Shown here piece after piece: positions 8,192 to 62,577 of a stretch of 64,000 nucleotides of DNA. The position numbers and the translations under genes were made by a program. The notes under the pieces are model-generated. The model made no database searches. It had not been told where the DNA came from and worked only from the letters and a program-made list of their open reading frames with translations. The DNA is taken from positions 62,001 to 126,000 of IMG/VR virus record IMGVR_UViG_3300008111_000002; one strand, 5' to 3'. Position 1 is the first letter of the stretch. Every line of letters begins with the position of its first letter.

Positions 8192-8208
8192 TCTTAGCTC
8201 CGTTTATC

Positions 8209-8215
8209 TATTTAT
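8209..8215 (-). promoter_or_regulatory. T4-type late promoter ATAAATA
   Basis: Motif 18 nt upstream of the 8191 start. Confidence 0.6.
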
Positions 8216-8216
8216 T

Positions 8217-8567
8217 TTAAAGTAATTGTCCTTGTGCAGCCAGATCTCGCTGTCTTTCTAGCTCTAAGTATTCTGCCTGACTTAATGTTGTAGATTTACT
8301 CAAAGCTTGTTCTCTAATATGTCTTAAAATTTTCCAATCTGTGCTATTTAAGAATTCTCTATTTTGAGCGGCCTTTAGATAACTAGGTGTCATCTCCGAA
8401 GTTTTTTCTTTAATAATTTTTAAAGATGTATCAAAATAATGTGTATTCTTTTGTAATTGCCAAAAATCAGCATCAGAAATCTCATGAATTAATACTGTAG
8501 ATGGAACTTCTGGTCTGTAGTTTAATACAGATATAACATTATCGTTTTCTATACAAATATAATACAT
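8217..8567 (-). CDS. Tail fibre assembly chaperone-like protein
   Basis: Start reassigned to ATG 8567 (TAATG overlap with the fibre stop); 'FLNSTDWKILRHIREQ' motif typical of tail-fibre assembly chaperones. Confidence 0.65.
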   Translation of the reverse strand: MYYICIENDNVISVLNYRPEVPSTVLIHEISDADFWQLQKNTHYFDTSLKIIKEKTSEMTPSYLKAAQNREFLNSTDWKILRHIREQALSKSTTLSQAEYLELERQRDLAAQGQLL

Positions 8568-39458: not shown

Positions 39459-40469
39459 ATGAATCTATTTAAAAAAGTAGCCTGCTTTACTGACATCCAT
39501 TTTGGACTCAAAGGCGGCAGTAGGGTCCACAATCAAGATTGTGAAGATTTTGTTACATGGTTTTGTGAAACAGCCAAAGCTAATGGTTGCGAAACAGCTA
39601 TATTTCTAGGCGATTGGCATCATAATAGATCAACTACTGATGTCAGTACAATGAATTATACTGTTAGTAATCTAGAAAAATTGAATAATTCGTTTGAACG
39701 TGTATATTTGATCCTAGGTAATCACGACGAGTACTATAAAGACAAACGAGAAATACACAGTTTAGAATTTGCTAGACTATTTCCTAACATTGTACCCATT
39801 AACAAAATACATACCGACGGTGATGTAACTATTATGCCTTGGTTAATTGGTGACGAATGGCAAAAAGTTTCTAAAATTAAAAGCCGCTATATGTTTGGTC
39901 ACTTAGAACTTCCGCACTTTTATATGAATGCCATGGTGCAGATGCCAGATCACGGACAGTTGCAGAGCACACATTTTCAAAATCAAGAATATGTGTTCAC
40001 TGGACATTTCCACAAGCGTCAGACCAGCAGAAATATTACCTACATTGGTAATGCATTTCCTCACAACTATGCAGATGCAGGCGACGATGATCGCGGCATG
40101 ATGATTTTAGAATGGGGCAAAGAGCCCGAATATCATACTTGGCCTGGACAACCTGTGTTTAGAGTCTATAAACTCAGTCAAATTGTAGAAGAGCATGAAA
40201 AGTATTTGCGTGAAAAAATGCACGTCAGGGTCAATATTGACATTCCTATTACGTTTGAGGAATCCAATTTCATCAAAGAAACATTTATTAAACAATACAA
40301 GCTACGAGAAATGATGCTGATTCCGCAAAAAGAAGAAATGCAAGACATAGAATTTACGGGTGATATTGCATTTGAAAGCGTAGACACTATTGTTGTTAAC
40401 CAGTTAACAGCCATTGACTCAGAAGCATACGATAAAAAACTGTTATTGGACATTTACCATAATCTATGA
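39459..40469 (+). CDS. gp47: Recombination nuclease, Mre11/SbcD-like (T4 gp47)
   Basis: Metallophosphoesterase motifs DIH, GD, GNHD, GH, GHFH. Confidence 0.92.
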   Translation: MNLFKKVACFTDIHFGLKGGSRVHNQDCEDFVTWFCETAKANGCETAIFLGDWHHNRSTTDVSTMNYTVSNLEKLNNSFERVYLILGNHDEYYKDKREIHSLEFARLFPNIVPINKIHTDGDVTIMPWLIGDEWQKVSKIKSRYMFGHLELPHFYMNAMVQMPDHGQLQSTHFQNQEYVFTGHFHKRQTSRNITYIGNAFPHNYADAGDDDRGMMILEWGKEPEYHTWPGQPVFRVYKLSQIVEEHEKYLREKMHVRVNIDIPITFEESNFIKETFIKQYKLREMMLIPQKEEMQDIEFTGDIAFESVDTIVVNQLTAIDSEAYDKKLLLDIYHNL

Positions 40470-42241
40470 TTAGAATTAAAAATTTAACTGTTAAAAACTT
40501 TATGAGCGTTGGAAATCAAACCCAAGCCGTAGATTTTGACAAAGGTCACCTAACTCTAGTGTTGGGCGAAAACATGGATCTAGGCGGAGACGATACTGGG
40601 GCACGTAACGGTACTGGTAAAACCACTATTATCAATGGTCTCAGCTATGCAATCTACGGCAATGCTTTAACTAACATTAAAAAAGATAACCTAATTAATA
40701 AAATCAACAACAAAAGTATGTTGGTTACTGTGACATTTGAAAAAGACGGATTAGAATATCACATAGAGCGTGGTCGTAAACCTAATCTATTAAAGTTTAG
40801 TATTAACGGACAAGAACTGCAGAGCATAGATCAAGACGAAAGTCAGGGAGATAGCCGAGAAACACAAAAGGCCATCGAAGATACTTTTGGAATGACTCAT
40901 GATATGTTTAAACATATTATGGCTCTTAACACTTATACTGAGCCTTTCCTAAGTATGAAGGCCGGGGATCAACGAGATATTATTGAACAACTGCTGGGTA
41001 TCACAATATTAAGTGAAAAAGCTGACAGTCTAAAAGAAAGTATTCGTCTTTCTAAAGAATTGATCACACAAGAAAATACAAAAATTGAAACTGTCAAACT
41101 CAGCAATCAAAAAATTCAACAGAGTATTGATGCGCTGCAAAGAAAACAAACACTTTGGCAGCAGACCAAAGAAGCAAACATCGATAGCCTAAATAAATCT
41201 ATCAAAAAACTCAGTTTGATAGACATTGAAAAAGAAATTCAAGCACATAAAGATCTTACAGAATGGTTAAAAACTAAGTCTGATATTGACAACGTTAATA
41301 GTCTTATCAGTAAGTTGAATATACAGCTGGAAAAAGAACAAAAAATTCTTGTTAGATCAGAATCTGAATTAGCTCAACTACTAGATCACAAATGTCATGC
41401 CTGTGGACAAGATATCCACGACAGTAAACATACAGACATGCTAGCACAAAAACAAGCAGCCGTAGAAGAAAGTCTACGTCTGGTACAGGAACATGAACAA
41501 GAATTTGCAGCTCTTAATGAAGCAAAGTCTATTCTTGGTGAATTGGGTCCACAACCTGCAACAAACTATGACAGTTTAGAGGAAGCACTCAATCATAAAA
41601 ATACTGTAGACAACTTGATCAAAGAAGTTGCTACTAAAACTAAAGAAGTAGATCCCTACACAGAACAAATTGAAGAATTAAAAAATACAGCACTACAAGA
41701 AATTGACTGGAATTCTGTAAACGAACTGACCCGTGTTAAAGAGCATCAAGAGTTTTTACTTAAATTGTTGACTAACAAGGACAGTTTTATTCGTAAAAAG
41801 ATTATTGATCAGAATCTAAGTTTCTTAAACAACAGATTAGGCTACTATCTTGATGCAATCGGATTACCTCATTCTGTTAAGTTCCAAAACGATCTTACTG
41901 TGCTGATTACACAGCTAGGGCAAGATTTAGATTTTGATAACCTATCAAGAGGCGAGCGTAATCGTTTAATTCTAAGTTTAAGCTTTGCATTCCGCGACGT
42001 GTGGGAAAACCTCTATCAAAATATCAACTTATTGTTTATTGACGAGTTAGTCGACAGTGGCATGGATGCTAGCGGTGTGGAAAGTTCTATTAAGATACTT
42101 AAGAAAATGACTCGTGAACGTGATAAGAATGTATTTTTAATCAGTCACAGAGATGATTTAACTAACAGAGTTAATCAAGTTCTTAAAGTTATCAAAGAAA
42201 ACGGGTTTACTAGCTACGCTACAGATGTAGAATTGGTATGA
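40466..42241 (+). CDS. gp46: Recombination ATPase, Rad50/SbcC-like (T4 gp46)
   Basis: Walker A NGTGKTT, coiled coil with CHAC zinc hook, signature LSRGE, Walker B LLFIDE. Confidence 0.95.
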   Translation: MIRIKNLTVKNFMSVGNQTQAVDFDKGHLTLVLGENMDLGGDDTGARNGTGKTTIINGLSYAIYGNALTNIKKDNLINKINNKSMLVTVTFEKDGLEYHIERGRKPNLLKFSINGQELQSIDQDESQGDSRETQKAIEDTFGMTHDMFKHIMALNTYTEPFLSMKAGDQRDIIEQLLGITILSEKADSLKESIRLSKELITQENTKIETVKLSNQKIQQSIDALQRKQTLWQQTKEANIDSLNKSIKKLSLIDIEKEIQAHKDLTEWLKTKSDIDNVNSLISKLNIQLEKEQKILVRSESELAQLLDHKCHACGQDIHDSKHTDMLAQKQAAVEESLRLVQEHEQEFAALNEAKSILGELGPQPATNYDSLEEALNHKNTVDNLIKEVATKTKEVDPYTEQIEELKNTALQEIDWNSVNELTRVKEHQEFLLKLLTNKDSFIRKKIIDQNLSFLNNRLGYYLDAIGLPHSVKFQNDLTVLITQLGQDLDFDNLSRGERNRLILSLSFAFRDVWENLYQNINLLFIDELVDSGMDASGVESSIKILKKMTRERDKNVFLISHRDDLTNRVNQVLKVIKENGFTSYATDVELV

Positions 42242-42474
42242 GTACAGAAGCGCACGACAGAATGATCTATGCTTTTCAGCAATATTTCAAATGGCAAACA
42301 CGTTTTGAGTACAAAAGATCAAAAGAGGCCGGAATTAAGGCACGATATTGGCTATCACAAATACGTAACGAGGCAAGCACAAGGCGAGTAGAAATACAAG
42401 ATAAACAAAATGAAAGAAAAGCGGCCAGAAAAGGCATAGTGGGGAGACCTCCAAACGTAAGTAAGGACATATGA
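42238..42474 (+). CDS. Small basic helical protein (Hc1-like nucleic-acid-binding candidate)
   Basis: 78 aa, K/R-rich; 'KEAGIKAR..LSQIR..A..RR.EIQ'; ATGA overlaps at both ends. Confidence 0.6.
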   Translation: MSTEAHDRMIYAFQQYFKWQTRFEYKRSKEAGIKARYWLSQIRNEASTRRVEIQDKQNERKAARKGIVGRPPNVSKDI

Positions 42475-42914
42475 CATGGACTTATCACGGACAAACTGTA
42501 GACCAATTACCTGAAGATTGTATAGGATTTGTTTACATCATCACTAATTTGATATCTGGGCGCAAGTACATAGGCAAAAAGCTGGCAAAATTTTCAAAAA
42601 CAACTTATAAAACAGTCAAACTTAAAAACGGCAACAAAAAGAAAAAGAAAATTCGCAGTAAAATTGATTCAGATTGGCGTGATTACTACGGGTCTAATCA
42701 AGAATTGCTAGCAGATGTACAAAATTTAGGCGCAGAAAACTTCACAAGAGAAATACTTTTTTACTGTAAATCCAAGGCAGAATGCAGTTATATTGAGGCT
42801 AGAGAACAATTTACGCAGAAAGTTTTGGAATCAAAAGACTATTATAACGGTCATATTCAAGTAAGAGTACACGGCTCACATATACTCAAGGCTCAAGAAA
42901 ACAAGGCAAAATAA
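42471..42914 (+). CDS. GIY-YIG endonuclease (Seg/endonuclease II-like), catalytic domain only
   Basis: 147 aa; 'GFVYIITN...RKYIGKK', 'YYGS', 'YIEAREQF', 'YYN'. Confidence 0.85.
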   Translation: MTWTYHGQTVDQLPEDCIGFVYIITNLISGRKYIGKKLAKFSKTTYKTVKLKNGNKKKKKIRSKIDSDWRDYYGSNQELLADVQNLGAENFTREILFYCKSKAECSYIEAREQFTQKVLESKDYYNGHIQVRVHGSHILKAQENKAK

Positions 42915-43283
42915 TGCGGTTTTTGGCTAGCGCAGGCCTAATTTCATGCGCTCTAAACCTGGTCTACGTGTACGCAGGGATGGAAATCTTCGCCGCAGAA
43001 GTACTCAGCAACTACCCATTTGGATGACGATCGCTAACTAAGCCCTGCGATTTTGCTGTTTGAAAAGAATATAAAAGGCAAAAAGAGGGGAGAAAAACCC
43101 CACGTGTGCGTTAGTGATAGCAGATTAACGTATACCGCCGTTGTGATAAGACGGAGCTCGTGGTACCGGACAACCGCCACTGTAATGCTCTACTGCTGTG
43201 TGACATTGTGCAACTCAGATAATGTTCATTTTTTTAGCCCGAGTCTGGGCTAAGTGTGACTGAACAATCTAGATAATATTTAA
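42915..43283 (+). ncRNA. Candidate large structured non-coding RNA (boundaries approximate)
   Basis: Dense nested helices, e.g. 42929-34/42947-52, 42973-79/43043-49, 43051-57/43077-83, 43087-90/43098-101, 43104-15/43124-35 (12 bp, 3 G-U), 43138-42/43150-54, 43160-63/43177-80, 43223-28/43261-66, 43234-41/43246-53; wobble pairs are G-U on the + strand. Confidence 0.65.
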
Positions 43284-43373
43284 AGTGCTTCGCACTAACA
43301 ATAAATTATAATTAAAAAAAGAAAAGTTGAGCTGATTGCGAAGCAACAGCGAAAGACGAAGCCTTGCTTCGTC
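43284..43373. other. Cluster of three short hairpins, two with GCGAAGC mini-hairpin cores
   Basis: AGTGCTTCGCACT 43284-96 (GCGAAGC on - strand); GCTGATTGCGAAGCAACAGC 43331-50; GACGAAGC-CTT-GCTTCGTC 43355-73. Confidence 0.7.
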
Positions 43374-43375
43374 AA

Positions 43376-43382
43376 ATAAATA
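43376..43382 (+). promoter_or_regulatory. T4-type late promoter ATAAATA
   Basis: About 28 nt upstream of the 43411 start. Confidence 0.6.
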
Positions 43383-43410
43383 AAGAATAACTTTAAGGAA
43401 TTGACCTTTT

Positions 43411-44802
43411 ATGAAAGTCAAAGATCTAATCGTCGAAAACAAAATAGACGAAGCACCGATGGGTACATTAAAATCGTTTGGATTAACATCACTATCAAAA
43501 GTTAGTCCTACAGCAAGTGGAAAATTACAATCGGGTACTATGGCTAATCAGTTGTCTGCTGATTTCAAAGAGTATCTTGGTAAAACAGGACAAACAGCCG
43601 AACCTGATATTGTATTGGCTTTCTTAAAGTCTAAAGGAATCCCTACAGATAGTGCTGAGAAAATTATTGCAGCAGGTCCAGACAAAGGTGTGCTTGCTAA
43701 AGGCATGGACGCTGTCAAGGGAATGTTTAAGGGCAAGCCAGGAGAACAACCTCAACAGGGAAATCAACCTACTCCTCAAGATACTAATCCTCAACCAAAA
43801 GGAAGAATTGAGCCTAAACTAGAACCAGAACAACCACAACCGAGTGCAGAAAAACAACCGGCGCAGAAACCCAACTTTAGTAATCAGCTAGGTGGAGGAC
43901 AACAAAAAATATCCACCGGCGGAGCAACTGCACCTGCAGGCGGATTACCGTCTACAACAGATCCTAGAACAGCAGTTAATAAGCCAGCTGCAGACACAAC
44001 AACTGCACCACAACAATCAACTGGTCGTAAGCAAGGCGGTGGAAAGGTTGCAGGCGTTCAAAGCCAATCACCGAGTGCAGTTCGTCGAAGAGAACAACGA
44101 GCAGCAGCTGGTAAATCCAGTAGTACTGGTGGAGCAATTGATCAGTTTGTTAAAACACAAACAGGTTCTAATCCTGTAACAATGAAAACAGAACCACAAC
44201 AAAATCCAGTACCTCAAAAACAAAAACAACAGCGTCAAAGAAAAAAGCCAGCTGGCAAAGTAGGTGATGCAGATTGGAGTCGTAATGCACAGCCTAGTTT
44301 TGGCGAAGCATTAGAATACGAATATAATCTGTTACTAGAAGCGTTAAGTAAAGGCCAATTAGATAAAATTTTTATGGCAGCAGCACAAGATGCAGCCAAA
44401 GCCGGAGTTCAAGGAGTTAGCAGTAAAGCACAAGGCGGTGCTCAATCCGCCGGCGGCACACAAGCCGGAGCACAGGCTAGCGGTGGTCAACAACAGGGCG
44501 GAGCAGGAGCATCAGGCGGTGGCGGAGCTCTTGGAGGATTTGCTAGAGGTCTAATGGGTCAAGATGACAGTGAAGGTGATGGAAAAGTCAAAGGCACATT
44601 AAATGTTAATCAATTAGCTTCGCTGTTACCAGGAGTTGATCCAAAATTGTTAGCACAAGCAATTACAGTTGTACGACAAGGAAAAAATCCTTCAAGAAAT
44701 CAAATGACAGCATTGGGAAATGCTATGATAGCAATTATTAAAGCTGACTCTCAAACAACTACTCAGGTAATGCAATTATTAAAAAGAGTTAGCCAACAAT
44801 GA
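43411..44802 (+). CDS. Hypothetical protein with long Q/P/G-rich linker; candidate internal head protein
   Basis: 463 aa; N-terminus 'MKVKDLIVENKIDEAP'; low-complexity middle. Confidence 0.6.
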   Translation: MKVKDLIVENKIDEAPMGTLKSFGLTSLSKVSPTASGKLQSGTMANQLSADFKEYLGKTGQTAEPDIVLAFLKSKGIPTDSAEKIIAAGPDKGVLAKGMDAVKGMFKGKPGEQPQQGNQPTPQDTNPQPKGRIEPKLEPEQPQPSAEKQPAQKPNFSNQLGGGQQKISTGGATAPAGGLPSTTDPRTAVNKPAADTTTAPQQSTGRKQGGGKVAGVQSQSPSAVRRREQRAAAGKSSSTGGAIDQFVKTQTGSNPVTMKTEPQQNPVPQKQKQQRQRKKPAGKVGDADWSRNAQPSFGEALEYEYNLLLEALSKGQLDKIFMAAAQDAAKAGVQGVSSKAQGGAQSAGGTQAGAQASGGQQQGGAGASGGGGALGGFARGLMGQDDSEGDGKVKGTLNVNQLASLLPGVDPKLLAQAITVVRQGKNPSRNQMTALGNAMIAIIKADSQTTTQVMQLLKRVSQQ

Positions 44803-55831: not shown

Positions 55832-55846
55832 CATTGTCTAAGTGAG

Positions 55847-55924
55847 CTTGCATAGGGCAAGACTTATGCTGTAACCCGCAGCGTAGACCTAAAACGTCAT
55901 ATTAAGGAGAAACAAATGGGACGT
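55847..55924 (+). promoter_or_regulatory. Structured 5' leader (two hairpins plus possible pseudoknot)
   Basis: CTTGC/GCAAG 55847-61, TATGCTG/CAGCGTA 55865-85, loop TAGG 55853-56 complementary to CCTA 55888-91. Confidence 0.5.
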
Positions 55925-56299
55925 CCATTAAGAAAAGATGTAAACGGTGTTGATGTACTCAACACATACGCAGCAGCAAATACCGGTATTAGAGTTGAAT
56001 TCCATGATGGTACATCACTAAGAACAGACGGTATTTTAATCAAACAACGTGGTGCAAAAACATTTGTTTGCGCTAGAATTGGAACTCCGACAGTATTAAC
56101 TACCAGTGTTCTACAGAATACAACACCATCCGCAGTAGGTCAAATGAATCTATTTGGATATGTTGGTGGTAACGGCGGAGCAAAAGTAAATCTTGCAAAA
56201 ATAACCAAGCGTGTTGCAACTGACTTTAGTAACAATAGATATACTTGGATTTTACAAAACGATAGTTCAAACGACTATATTGTATTAACAGCAATTTAA
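55916..56299 (+). CDS. Virion structural protein
   Basis: 127 aa; strong AAGGAG SD; late promoter upstream. Confidence 0.7.
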   Translation: MGRPLRKDVNGVDVLNTYAAANTGIRVEFHDGTSLRTDGILIKQRGAKTFVCARIGTPTVLTTSVLQNTTPSAVGQMNLFGYVGGNGGAKVNLAKITKRVATDFSNNRYTWILQNDSSNDYIVLTAI

Positions 56300-62574: not shown

Positions 62575-62577
62575 ATA
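62571..62577 (+). promoter_or_regulatory. Late promoter ATAAATA
   Basis: About 21 nt upstream of the ATG at 62599. Confidence 0.55.

What the first reader, a model, noticed from the sequence alone, without database searches (positions are those of the whole stretch)
42471..43283. Minimal GIY-YIG nuclease immediately followed by a ~370-nt highly structured candidate ncRNA
Seen: the largest non-coding gap in this gene-dense window (42915-43410) starts at the GIY-YIG stop codon, is richer in GC than its surroundings and folds into about ten nested helices. These include a 12-bp helix 43104-15/43124-35 with three G-U pairs, a multi-branch domain closed by CGCAGGG/CCCTGCG, a nested GTGG..CGG-ACAA-CCG..CCAC arm, and a long arm flanked by a direct AGATAAT repeat (43217, 43271). 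Wobbles are G-U on the + strand and would be A-C on the - strand, which favours an RNA co-transcribed with the nuclease. The 147-aa protein is the catalytic domain only, with no C-terminal DNA-binding extension. Known: IscB/omegaRNA (HEARO) and TnpB/reRNA pair compact nucleases with adjacent RNAs; GIY-YIG genes also accompany group I introns. Inference: an uncharacterised nuclease-RNA pair (RNA-guided or RNA-regulated) or a new large phage RNA class. T4 endonuclease II is similarly short and needs no RNA, so adjacency could be incidental.
Basis: partly seen in the sequence, partly recalled or inferred. Interest (0 to 1): 0.85.

Follow-up and report, generated by a model that had tools for sequence, protein, structure and literature searches.

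The report
Polynucleobacter-1 RNA beside a phage nuclease
The folded RNA next to the small phage nuclease is real, but its front third is an RNA family catalogued in 2010 whose function is still unknown.

Summary
A GC-rich, + strand, heavily base-paired RNA starts at the stop codon of a 147-aa GIY-YIG gene.

It is not a new class. Positions 42925-43061 match Rfam RF01718 (Polynucleobacter-1 RNA) at 102.8 bits against a threshold of 37. The 2010 discovery paper already recorded a 3' tail with a pseudoknot and a position downstream of PSSM2_218-like genes. I show that gene family is this GIY-YIG.

What is new:
- The RNA runs to about 43373 (about 450 nt), with at least 13 helices and two covarying pseudoknots.
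- It sits at a fixed locus (gp47-gp46-cargo-nuclease-RNA, then a convergent baseplate gene) in a large clade of freshwater T4-like phages; three related contigs are 262-355 kb.
- One lineage has a PD-(D/E)XK nuclease in place of the GIY-YIG.
- Full-length homologs in freshwater Burkholderiales have no nuclease and pair with DUF6641 instead.
- Cultured phages with GIY-YIG homologs (37-52% identity) lack the RNA.

An RNA-guided nuclease is therefore poorly supported.

Two direct-repeat 7-mers (43217-23 and 43271-77) are identical in 97 of 100 phage homologs while the 7-mer itself changed about 31 times. No complementary partner exists in cis.

The parts
42238..42474 (+). 78-aa basic ORF, overlapping the GIY-YIG start (ATGA overlap)
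   Evidence: ORF list. No family hit in Pfam, PHROGs, PADLOC or NCBIfam. A homolog at this position was detected in 34 of 113 related loci.
42471..42914 (+). 147-aa stand-alone GIY-YIG nuclease gene (phrog_447, often mislabelled 'NAD synthetase')
   Evidence: PF19835, E=4e-33. phrog_447 matched full length. The GIY, YIG, Glu and Asn motifs are invariant in 87 homologs of 132-147 aa. Homolog of PSSM2_218.
42912..42924 (+). Conserved 5' leader motif (UAA-R-C-R-G-U-W) that contains the stop codon of the upstream ORF
   Evidence: The same motif precedes the RNA whichever ORF lies upstream: GIY-YIG or one of the inserted ORFs (L113 with the PD-(D/E)XK nuclease and L054 are at best weak matches). 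No shared -35/-10 motif was seen.
42925..43061 (+). 5' core = Rfam RF01718 Polynucleobacter-1 RNA. Helices: P1 42930-34/42947-51, P2 42958-61/42975-78, P3 42988-91/42998-43001, P4 43006-11/43053-58, P5 43016-17/43022-23, P6 43029-34/43047-52.
   Evidence: cmscan 102.8 bits, threshold 37, model positions 1-141. P1, P3, P4 and P6 are 98-100% paired against 14-66% when the partner is slid, with many compensatory changes.
43062..43199 (+). Tail domain. Helices: T0 43077-79/43137-39, T1 43087-90/43098-101, T2 43104-15/43124-35, T3 43154-57/43187-90, T4 43160-64/43176-80. Pseudoknots: PK-A 43118-23/43193-98 (T2 loop with a downstream strand) and PK-B 43140-44/43170-74 (with the T4 loop).
   Evidence: Unbiased covariation scan and RNAalifold. 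PK-A is 96%, PK-B 98% and T3 97% paired, against 16-72% when slid. A tail and 'tailpknot' are already present in the 2010 alignment.
43198..43233 (+). Repeat unit A: GUGUGAC, 11 nt, ACUC, then the 7-mer AGAUAAU at 43217-43223
43234..43254 (+). Conserved hairpin between the two units (8 bp)
   Evidence: RNAalifold on the realigned sub-region; 51-73 of 73 sequences form a standard pair at each position (8 pairs).
43254..43296 (+). Repeat unit B: GUGUGAC, 9 nt, AUCU, then the identical 7-mer AGAUAAU at 43271-43277, followed by a UUC(G)-loop hairpin at 43284-43296
   Evidence: The 7-mers are identical in 97 of 100 homologs while 11 types exist. There are 39 same-branch co-changes. After shuffling, a mean of 10.8 of 73 are identical.
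43326..43373 (+). 3' terminal domain: a hairpin at 43326-29/43344-47 with the conserved loop GAGC..GCGAA, then a final 7-bp hairpin at 43356-62/43366-72
   Evidence: Found in 63-67 of 99 phage loci with covarying stems, and in bacterial homologs. Only 0-4 U in the 6 nt that follow, so it is not a canonical intrinsic terminator.
43375..43410 (+). T4-type late-promoter-like AATAAATA (43375-82) and AAGGA ribosome-binding site (43395-99) of the next gene. Not part of the RNA.
   Evidence: Read from the sequence. ATAAATA recurs after the final hairpin in many related loci. The promoter assignment rests on the known T4 late consensus TATAAATA and is an inference.

Best explanation
Shown: this is the phage version of the Polynucleobacter-1 RNA family. 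It is a multi-domain folded RNA of about 450 nt on the + strand with four parts: the RF01718 core, a doubly pseudoknotted tail, two repeat modules and a 3' hairpin pair.

Inferred: it is made as the last part of the gp47-gp46-cargo-nuclease transcript. It begins at the stop codon of whichever ORF lies upstream and ends before a late promoter.

Inferred, my best guess: it acts as a free-standing RNA, a scaffold or sponge that binds a protein or nucleic-acid partner. Binding would go through its single-stranded repeated tags (the two identical 7-mers) and the conserved GAGCG..GCGAA loop. It does not act as a guide or cofactor of the GIY-YIG.

The small nuclease most likely belongs to the recombination module with gp46/gp47, as a nuclease that needs no sequence-specific DNA-binding domain. 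Its adjacency to the RNA is then operon architecture inherited within one phage clade.
For: Identity and structure:
- RF01718 hit.
- Nucleotide conservation across 42925-43285 in about 95 of 107 loci.
- At least 13 helices, most with compensatory changes, and slid-partner controls.
- G-U far exceeds A-C.
- The 3' domain is conserved in phages and bacteria.

Independence from the nuclease:
- 26 bacterial full-length homologs have no GIY-YIG or PD-(D/E)XK. In 24 of 26 a divergent DUF6641 gene lies nearby instead.
- L054 carries the RNA in an unrelated context.
- Seven loci have an extra 228-334-aa ORF between GIY-YIG and RNA.
- Six cultured phages with GIY-YIG homologs have no RNA and no room for one.
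- The 7-mer differs in 60% of pairs whose GIY-YIG proteins are 90-95% identical.

Operon-end position:
- Fixed synteny with a convergent baseplate gene.
- The stop codon lies inside the conserved 5' motif and no promoter is conserved.

Recombination-module reading: one lineage (7 loci) has a PF24608 PD-(D/E)XK nuclease (PHROG label 'RusA-like resolvase') in the same slot.
Against: - No transcript data exist, so the RNA ends, any processing and co-transcription are all inferred.
- The GIY-YIG-RNA adjacency survives heavy gene turnover just upstream (radical SAM and 2OG-oxygenase cargo): 107 of 122 assessable loci keep it. Replacement by another nuclease at exactly this spot could equally mean the RNA needs a nuclease neighbour.
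- No binding partner has been identified.
- The identity-coupled 7-mers are not explained by any tested model.
- Phage 7-mers (RGAURAW) differ from bacterial ones (WKCRAAW), so a single shared partner is unlikely.
Confidence: 0.55

Rival explanations
1. Nuclease-RNA partnership. The RNA guides, tethers or regulates the neighbouring small nuclease, which lacks a DNA-binding domain. The fast-evolving identical 7-mers would act as address elements.
For: - Adjacency in 107 of 122 assessable phage loci despite upstream gene turnover.
- A second nuclease family occupies the same slot in one lineage.
- Only 18 residues follow the catalytic domain.
- The 7-mers behave like programmable tags.
Against: - Bacterial homologs have no nuclease nearby.
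- GIY-YIG homologs at 37-52% identity lack the RNA.
- Seven loci tolerate an ORF between the two.
- All phage cases come from one syntenic clade, so they amount to one evolutionary association rather than many.
- 7 nt is too short to specify a target, and no complement is enriched in the 64-kb window.
- There is no RuvC/HNH-type effector and no match to the HEARO ωRNA family in Rfam.
Confidence: 0.12
2. Cis-acting 3'-UTR element. The structure protects or processes the 3' end of the early/middle operon mRNA, or couples translation termination to RNA fate, and has no function in trans.
For: - It starts at the upstream stop codon in every phage locus.
- It lies at a convergent junction.
- It ends in stable hairpins.
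Against: - Bacterial homologs are stand-alone genes, divergent from DUF6641 with no upstream ORF on the same strand.
- About 450 nt with two pseudoknots, invariant junction nucleotides and identity-coupled tags is far more than a 3' stabiliser needs.
Confidence: 0.15
3. Selfish endonuclease next to a conserved landmark. The GIY-YIG and the PD-(D/E)XK are free-standing homing-type endonucleases that settled beside, and perhaps cut within, the highly conserved RNA gene.
For: - SegE-type domain, with PADLOC and PHROG 'homing endonuclease' hits.
- The neighbourhood is plastic.
- One nuclease family was replaced by another at the same site.
Against: - The gene is present in nearly all members, with the catalytic motifs invariant in 87 homologs, rather than sporadically.
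- It lacks the C-terminal DNA-binding region of Seg proteins.
- The variable cargo upstream consists of metabolic genes, not homing endonuclease genes.
Confidence: 0.1
4. Mimic or decoy. The phage copy imitates the RNA of host mobile modules (DUF6641 + 137-aa gene + RNA) in order to hijack or neutralise their protein partner.
For: - Host-side loci carry proteins plus RNA, whereas phages carry the RNA only.
- DUF6641 falls in a phage-related family, phrog_31551.
- Copies lie near integrases and IS elements and occur more than once per genome.
Against: - Phage and bacterial 7-mers differ systematically.
- DUF6641 has no recognisable fold or defence annotation.
- The host of the phage is only inferred.
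Confidence: 0.08

Closest known systems
Polynucleobacter-1 RNA motif (Rfam RF01718; Weinberg et al. 2010, PMC2864571)
   Same: The 5' 137 nt match the model end to end. The 2010 alignment already shows a 3' tail with a pseudoknot, and its text places most examples downstream of GOS11034/PSSM2_218-like genes.
   Different: - Rfam models only 141 nt, whereas the conserved RNA here is about 450 nt.
- The 2010 paper found no example in a sequenced phage and did not identify the upstream gene as a GIY-YIG nuclease.
- The supplement passages I read do not mention the repeat modules, the identity-coupled 7-mers, the DUF6641 pairing or the phage clade. I did not read the whole paper.
Large orphan structured RNAs of phages and prophages (GOLLD, ROOL) - from my own knowledge
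   Same: Large, elaborately folded, linked to phages or mobile elements, and of unknown biochemical function.
   Different: No sequence or structure match: cmscan found nothing beyond RF01718 in this region. No tRNA neighbourhood.
IscB-omegaRNA (HEARO) and TnpB-reRNA guided nucleases
   Same: A compact nuclease gene next to a large structured RNA.
   Different: - The effector here is a GIY-YIG, not RuvC/HNH.
- No HEARO hit.
- No terminal guide segment.
- The RNA and the protein each occur widely without the other.
Satellite phage P4 immunity (seqA/seqC direct repeats targeted by CI RNA) and P1/P7 c4 RNA - from my own knowledge
   Same: Short direct repeats within one transcript that must stay identical to each other, yet differ between related elements and act as specificity tags.
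   Different: In P4 the complementary seqB lies between the repeats in the same transcript. Here no complement of 5 nt or more exists in the RNA or within -700 to +1000 nt.
T4 Seg endonucleases and T4 endonuclease II (stand-alone GIY-YIG enzymes)
   Same: SegE-type GIY-YIG catalytic domain.
   Different: No Seg-type C-terminal DNA-binding region and no sporadic distribution. Homology to endonuclease II was not tested.

Membership tests
Polynucleobacter-1 RNA (RF01718) | Covariance-model score at or above the curated gathering threshold over the whole model | tested here: met
   102.8 bits against 37, model positions 1-141, + strand.
Polynucleobacter-1 RNA (RF01718) | Model helices kept by compensatory changes in homologs | tested here: met
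   P1, P3, P4 and P6 are 98-100% paired with 25-80 compensatory cells each. P2 and P5 are invariant, so they say nothing either way.
Polynucleobacter-1 RNA (RF01718) | Optional 3' tail with pseudoknot, as in the original Stockholm alignment | tested here: met
   Tail helices and two pseudoknots covary. The tail sequence motifs are visible in the 2010 alignment. I did not compare the pseudoknots one to one with the 2010 annotation.
Polynucleobacter-1 RNA (RF01718) | Located downstream of a GOS11034/PSSM2_218-like gene | tested here: met
   The GIY-YIG protein hits PSSM2_218 (37% identity, tblastn).
RNA-guided nuclease systems (IscB-omegaRNA, TnpB-reRNA) | RuvC-type (with or without HNH) effector protein | tested here: not met
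   The only domain is GIY-YIG, PF19835.
RNA-guided nuclease systems (IscB-omegaRNA, TnpB-reRNA) | RNA belongs to a known omegaRNA/reRNA family or carries a variable guide at one end | tested here: not met
   No Rfam hit other than RF01718. Both RNA ends are conserved motifs.
RNA-guided nuclease systems (IscB-omegaRNA, TnpB-reRNA) | Protein and RNA co-occur wherever either is found | tested here: not met
   The RNA occurs without a nuclease in 26 bacterial loci and in L054. The nuclease occurs without the RNA in 6 cultured phages.
Group I intron carrying a GIY-YIG homing endonuclease | Group I ribozyme core interrupting a host gene, with the endonuclease ORF inside the intron | tested here: not met
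   No Intron_gpI hit even at E<=10. The flanking ORFs are complete, separate genes.
Free-standing Seg-type homing endonuclease | N-terminal GIY-YIG catalytic domain | tested here: met
   PF19835, E=4e-33.
Free-standing Seg-type homing endonuclease | C-terminal DNA-binding region and sporadic presence among close relatives | tested here: not met
   18 residues follow the domain and homologs are 132-147 aa. The gene is present in 114 of 122 assessable loci: 107 adjacent to the RNA and 7 with another ORF between.
Free-standing Seg-type homing endonuclease | Site-specific cleavage of the endonuclease-less allele | not testable with these tools
   Needs enzyme assays or co-infection crosses.
Type III toxin-antitoxin RNA or CRISPR-like mini-array | Tandem near-identical repeat units (with a toxin gene downstream, or with variable spacers between) | tested here: not met
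   Outside GUGUGAC and the 7-mer the two units differ consistently. The intervening hairpin is conserved and covaries. No toxin or cas gene is nearby.

The most novel reading that the evidence does not exclude
The two (in bacteria also two) identity-coupled 7-mers could be a programmable address read by a trans nucleic acid or a cognate protein. The family would then be an RNA-based specificity system: self/non-self recognition, immunity, or guidance of a neighbouring effector (GIY-YIG or PD-(D/E)XK in phages, DUF6641 in bacterial modules). A structural alternative that the data also allow is a parallel-stranded homo-base-paired helix between the two copies. Position k couples with position k, not with 8-k, which is what that geometry predicts. 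A helix of that kind is, to my knowledge, not known in a natural RNA.
Probability: 0.1. Interest if true: 0.9.

Novelty: new member of a known kind. Interest (0 to 1): 0.5.

Why it matters
Polynucleobacter-1 has been an orphan RNA since 2010. Within the paper library searched, the only paper naming it or RF01718 is the 2010 discovery paper.

This work gives the family a natural home: a clade of freshwater T4-like phages (three related contigs are 262-355 kb), plus mobile modules in Limnohabitans and Polynucleobacter-type bacteria. It roughly triples the known length, provides a structure with two pseudoknots, and identifies two different conserved gene partners.

It also shows that a tempting 'new RNA-guided GIY-YIG nuclease' reading is mostly a rediscovery plus clade-wide synteny.

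The new lead is the identity coupling of two direct-repeat 7-mers, with about 31 label changes and 39 joint substitutions. Ordinary RNA pairing does not produce that kind of covariation, so it gives a sharp, testable handle on what the RNA recognises.

Tried and rejected
- blastn of the locus against 50,697 cultured phage records: no match.
- tRNA/tmRNA scan: none.
- Sensitive Rfam search of the tail and of the other apparent gap: nothing credible.
- Promoter and terminator scan: no + strand promoter before the RNA and no terminator.
- Single-sequence folding energy: not significant.
- A Watson-Crick partner for the 7-mers:
  - no aligned column;
  - no 7-mer complement within -700 to +1000 nt;
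  - no 5-mer complement at a consistent position;
  - no syntenic complement in 889 kb of flanks;
  - no enrichment in the 64-kb window;
  - the one 10-mer complement, at 2586, lies inside a - strand ORF whose mRNA has the same sense as the RNA.
- The local helix 43215-20/43267-72 does not explain the coupling.
- Co-evolution of the 7-mers with the GIY-YIG protein: the 7-mers change far faster than the protein.
- DUF6641: no literature, no NCBIfam or PADLOC hit. The AF2 model (pLDDT 80) has no PDB fold match with E<0.3.
- Homing-endonuclease hot-spot idea: the variable genes upstream are radical SAM, 2OG-oxygenase and SDR enzymes, not endonucleases.
- GIY-YIG against PDB sequences: only a marginal hit, E=0.29.
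Full report
**What is there**

The window is part of a T4-related myophage. The gene order is:
- gp47 (39459-40469) and gp46 (40466-42241);
- a 78-aa basic ORF;
- a 147-aa GIY-YIG gene (42471-42914);
- a 496-nt gap;
- a low-complexity 463-aa ORF and a 155-aa ORF;
- a convergent T4-type baseplate gene.

The closest cultured relatives by gp46 are jumbo phages such as PA5oct and Phosso (48% identity). Related IMG/VR contigs reach 262-355 kb. The gap is the largest non-coding stretch in the window, because the apparent 679-nt gap at 62575 is a CBM_5_12-repeat ORF that runs off the window end. The gap's conserved RNA stretch (42925-43285) has 45.7% GC against 35% for the window; the whole gap has 42.1%.

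**The RNA is a known family**

cmscan places Rfam RF01718, Polynucleobacter-1 RNA, at 42925-43061 on the + strand. It scores 102.8 bits against a threshold of 37 and covers the full model. The discovery paper's supplement says three relevant things (PMC2864571):
- most examples lie downstream of GOS11034 genes with possible homology to PSSM2_218 of cyanophage P-SSM2;
- no example was found in a sequenced phage.

Its Stockholm file contains a 'tail' and a 'tailpknot'. The GIY-YIG protein of the window hits exactly PSSM2_218, which is annotated 'NAD synthetase'. So the nuclease-RNA pair is the association reported in 2010, although the gene's nature was not recognised then. I found no later paper naming this RNA.

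**Relatives**

A second pattern added 13 diverged ones. Synteny is fixed: gp47-gp46, then variable cargo, then a nuclease, then the RNA, then the convergent baseplate gene. Of the 122 assessable loci:
- 107 have the GIY-YIG (57-84% aa identity to the window's) ending just before the RNA;
- 7 have an extra unknown ORF of 228-334 aa between GIY-YIG and RNA;
- 7, all one lineage, have a PF24608 PD-(D/E)XK nuclease instead of the GIY-YIG;
- 1 (L054) is an unrelated context.

The cargo between gp46 and the nuclease turns over. It holds radical SAM enzymes, a 2OG oxygenase and an SDR.

**Extent and structure**

Nucleotide conservation (70-85%) spans 42925-43285 in about 95 of 107 loci. A further conserved 3' domain lies at about 43326-43373. 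It is a hairpin with the loop GAGCG..GCGAA followed by a final 7-8-bp hairpin, and it is present in 63-67 of 99 phage loci and in bacterial homologs. The RNA is therefore about 450 nt.

I analysed 73 non-redundant sequences (alignment A1) with RNAalifold and with an unbiased pair scan. These recover the Rfam helices plus T0-T4 and two pseudoknots. PK-A joins the T2 loop to 43193-98. PK-B joins 43140-44 to the T4 loop. The helices are 87-100% paired, against 11-82% when the partner is slid. G-U outnumbers A-C by 440 to 65, which fixes the + strand.

- The 12-bp helix and the outer GTGG/CCAC stem are right.
- The CGCAGGG/CCCTGCG closing helix is not conserved.
- The GTTCA/TGAAC arm is not conserved.
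- The 'ACAA loop' is in fact a pseudoknot strand.

Folding energy alone is unremarkable (z = -1.08).

**Is the nuclease needed?**

A genome scan found 29 real homologs in 37 hits. Three are phage-type contigs binned into MAGs. The other 26 are a 'bacterial type' in freshwater Burkholderiales:
- Limnohabitans sp. Bal53, with two copies;
- Polynucleobacter rarus;
- Comamonadaceae MAGs.

These are full length, with tail, repeat modules and 3' domain recognisable. None has a GIY-YIG or PD-(D/E)XK gene nearby. Instead, 24 of 26 have a divergently transcribed DUF6641 gene (phrog_31551), and about half of these also have a 137-aa gene next to it. The DUF6641 gene starts about 240 nt upstream of the RNA. 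The flanks vary and integrases or IS elements are often close.

Conversely, GIY-YIG homologs in Melnitz (52% identity), ACP17, C48C1, phiN3, V45v66 and P-SSM2 have no such RNA, and in the five annotated genomes no room for one. The phage association is thus one inherited arrangement, not repeated independent coupling.

The upstream stop codon lies inside the RNA's conserved 5' motif whichever ORF precedes it, and no promoter is conserved. This points to read-through transcription. A late-promoter-like AATAAATA follows the RNA.

**The unexplained feature**

The 3' part holds two modules of the form GUGUGAC, about 10 nt, ACUC or AUCU, a 7-mer, a linker and a hairpin. The two 7-mers (43217-23 and 43271-77) are direct repeats.
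- They are identical in 97 of 100 phage homologs, although 11 different 7-mers occur.
- Each variable position has its counterpart in the other copy as its top mutual-information partner (0.56-1.17 bits).
- Parsimony on a tree built without these columns gives 39 joint substitutions on the same branches and about 31 changes of the 7-mer.
- After shuffling, a mean of 10.8 of 73 are identical, against 70 observed.
- The bacterial type shows the same coupling with other 7-mers: AGCGAAA, ATCGAAA, ATCAAAA and ACCAAAA.
- The 7-mer differs in 60% of pairs whose nucleases are 90-95% identical.
- No complementary partner exists in the RNA, its flanks or the window.

Coupling is between position k and position k. 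That fits either two sites for one trans partner or a parallel homo-paired contact. It does not fit an ordinary helix.

**Verdict**

It is a new, longer, phage-borne member of a known orphan family, not a new class.

The best reading (confidence 0.55) is an operon-terminal, independently acting structured RNA whose neighbour nuclease belongs to the gp46/gp47 recombination module. Non-orthologous replacement by a PD-(D/E)XK 'RusA-like' enzyme fits that reading.

A nuclease-RNA partnership keeps about 0.12, a pure cis 3'-UTR role 0.15, a selfish-endonuclease landmark 0.10 and a host-RNA mimic 0.08. What is interesting here is the extended architecture, the two different gene partners and the identity-coupled tags.

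Noticed in passing
window 55846-55918 (+): A second Rfam hit: freshwater-2 RNA (RF02980, 54.4 bits against a threshold of 49.9). It ends in AAGGAGA and the ATG of a 127-aa ORF (55916-56299) that has no Pfam family. It looks like a 5'-UTR cis-regulatory element.
   Followed up: partly
window 42238-42474 (+): A 78-aa lysine/arginine-rich ORF overlaps the start of the GIY-YIG gene, which lacks a DNA-binding domain (ATGA overlap, which suggests translational coupling). It could supply nucleic-acid binding in trans. A homolog was detected in 34 of 113 related loci, and no family hit was found.
   Followed up: partly
L113, L169-L173, L175 (about -600 to -82 nt relative to the RNA core pattern): One phage lineage has a 172-aa PF24608 PD-(D/E)XK nuclease (PHROG label 'RusA-like resolvase'), preceded by a 70-aa ORF, exactly where the other loci have the GIY-YIG.
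   Followed up: yes
L128, L145, L124, L156 and 20 other genome loci: In freshwater Burkholderiales the RNA forms a conserved module of about 1.4 kb with a divergent DUF6641 gene and a 137-aa gene. Limnohabitans sp. Bal53 has two copies. The L128 copy loses similarity at about +190 nt of the RNA, and a block that lies upstream in other copies lies downstream here, so an insertion or rearrangement inside the RNA gene is possible.
   Followed up: partly
GenBank and PHROG annotations of GIY-YIG homologs (e.g. NC_006883.2 PSSM2_218, phrog_447): This widespread family of ~148-aa phage GIY-YIG proteins (514 phage records hit) is commonly labelled 'NAD synthetase', which the domain evidence does not support.
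   Followed up: yes
window 43411-44802 (+): A 463-aa ORF rich in Q, G, A and P, with no family hit. Weak tblastn matches (25-47% identity) turned up in only three other loci, besides L098, which is identical to the window. In most related phages the RNA is followed within about 150-250 nt by the end of the convergent baseplate gene.
   Followed up: partly
window 8192-8566: The second-largest stretch without an ORF of 60 aa or more (375 nt), between two - strand ORFs. No Rfam hit at gathering thresholds.
   Followed up: no
window 43330-43343 and the equivalent loops in related loci: The conserved 3' hairpin loop GAGCG..GCGAA contains the motif AGCGAA. In many bacterial homologs the same motif is also the sequence of the coupled 7-mers and of the T4 loop, giving up to 4-5 copies per RNA. 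This hints at a repeated binding motif.
   Followed up: partly
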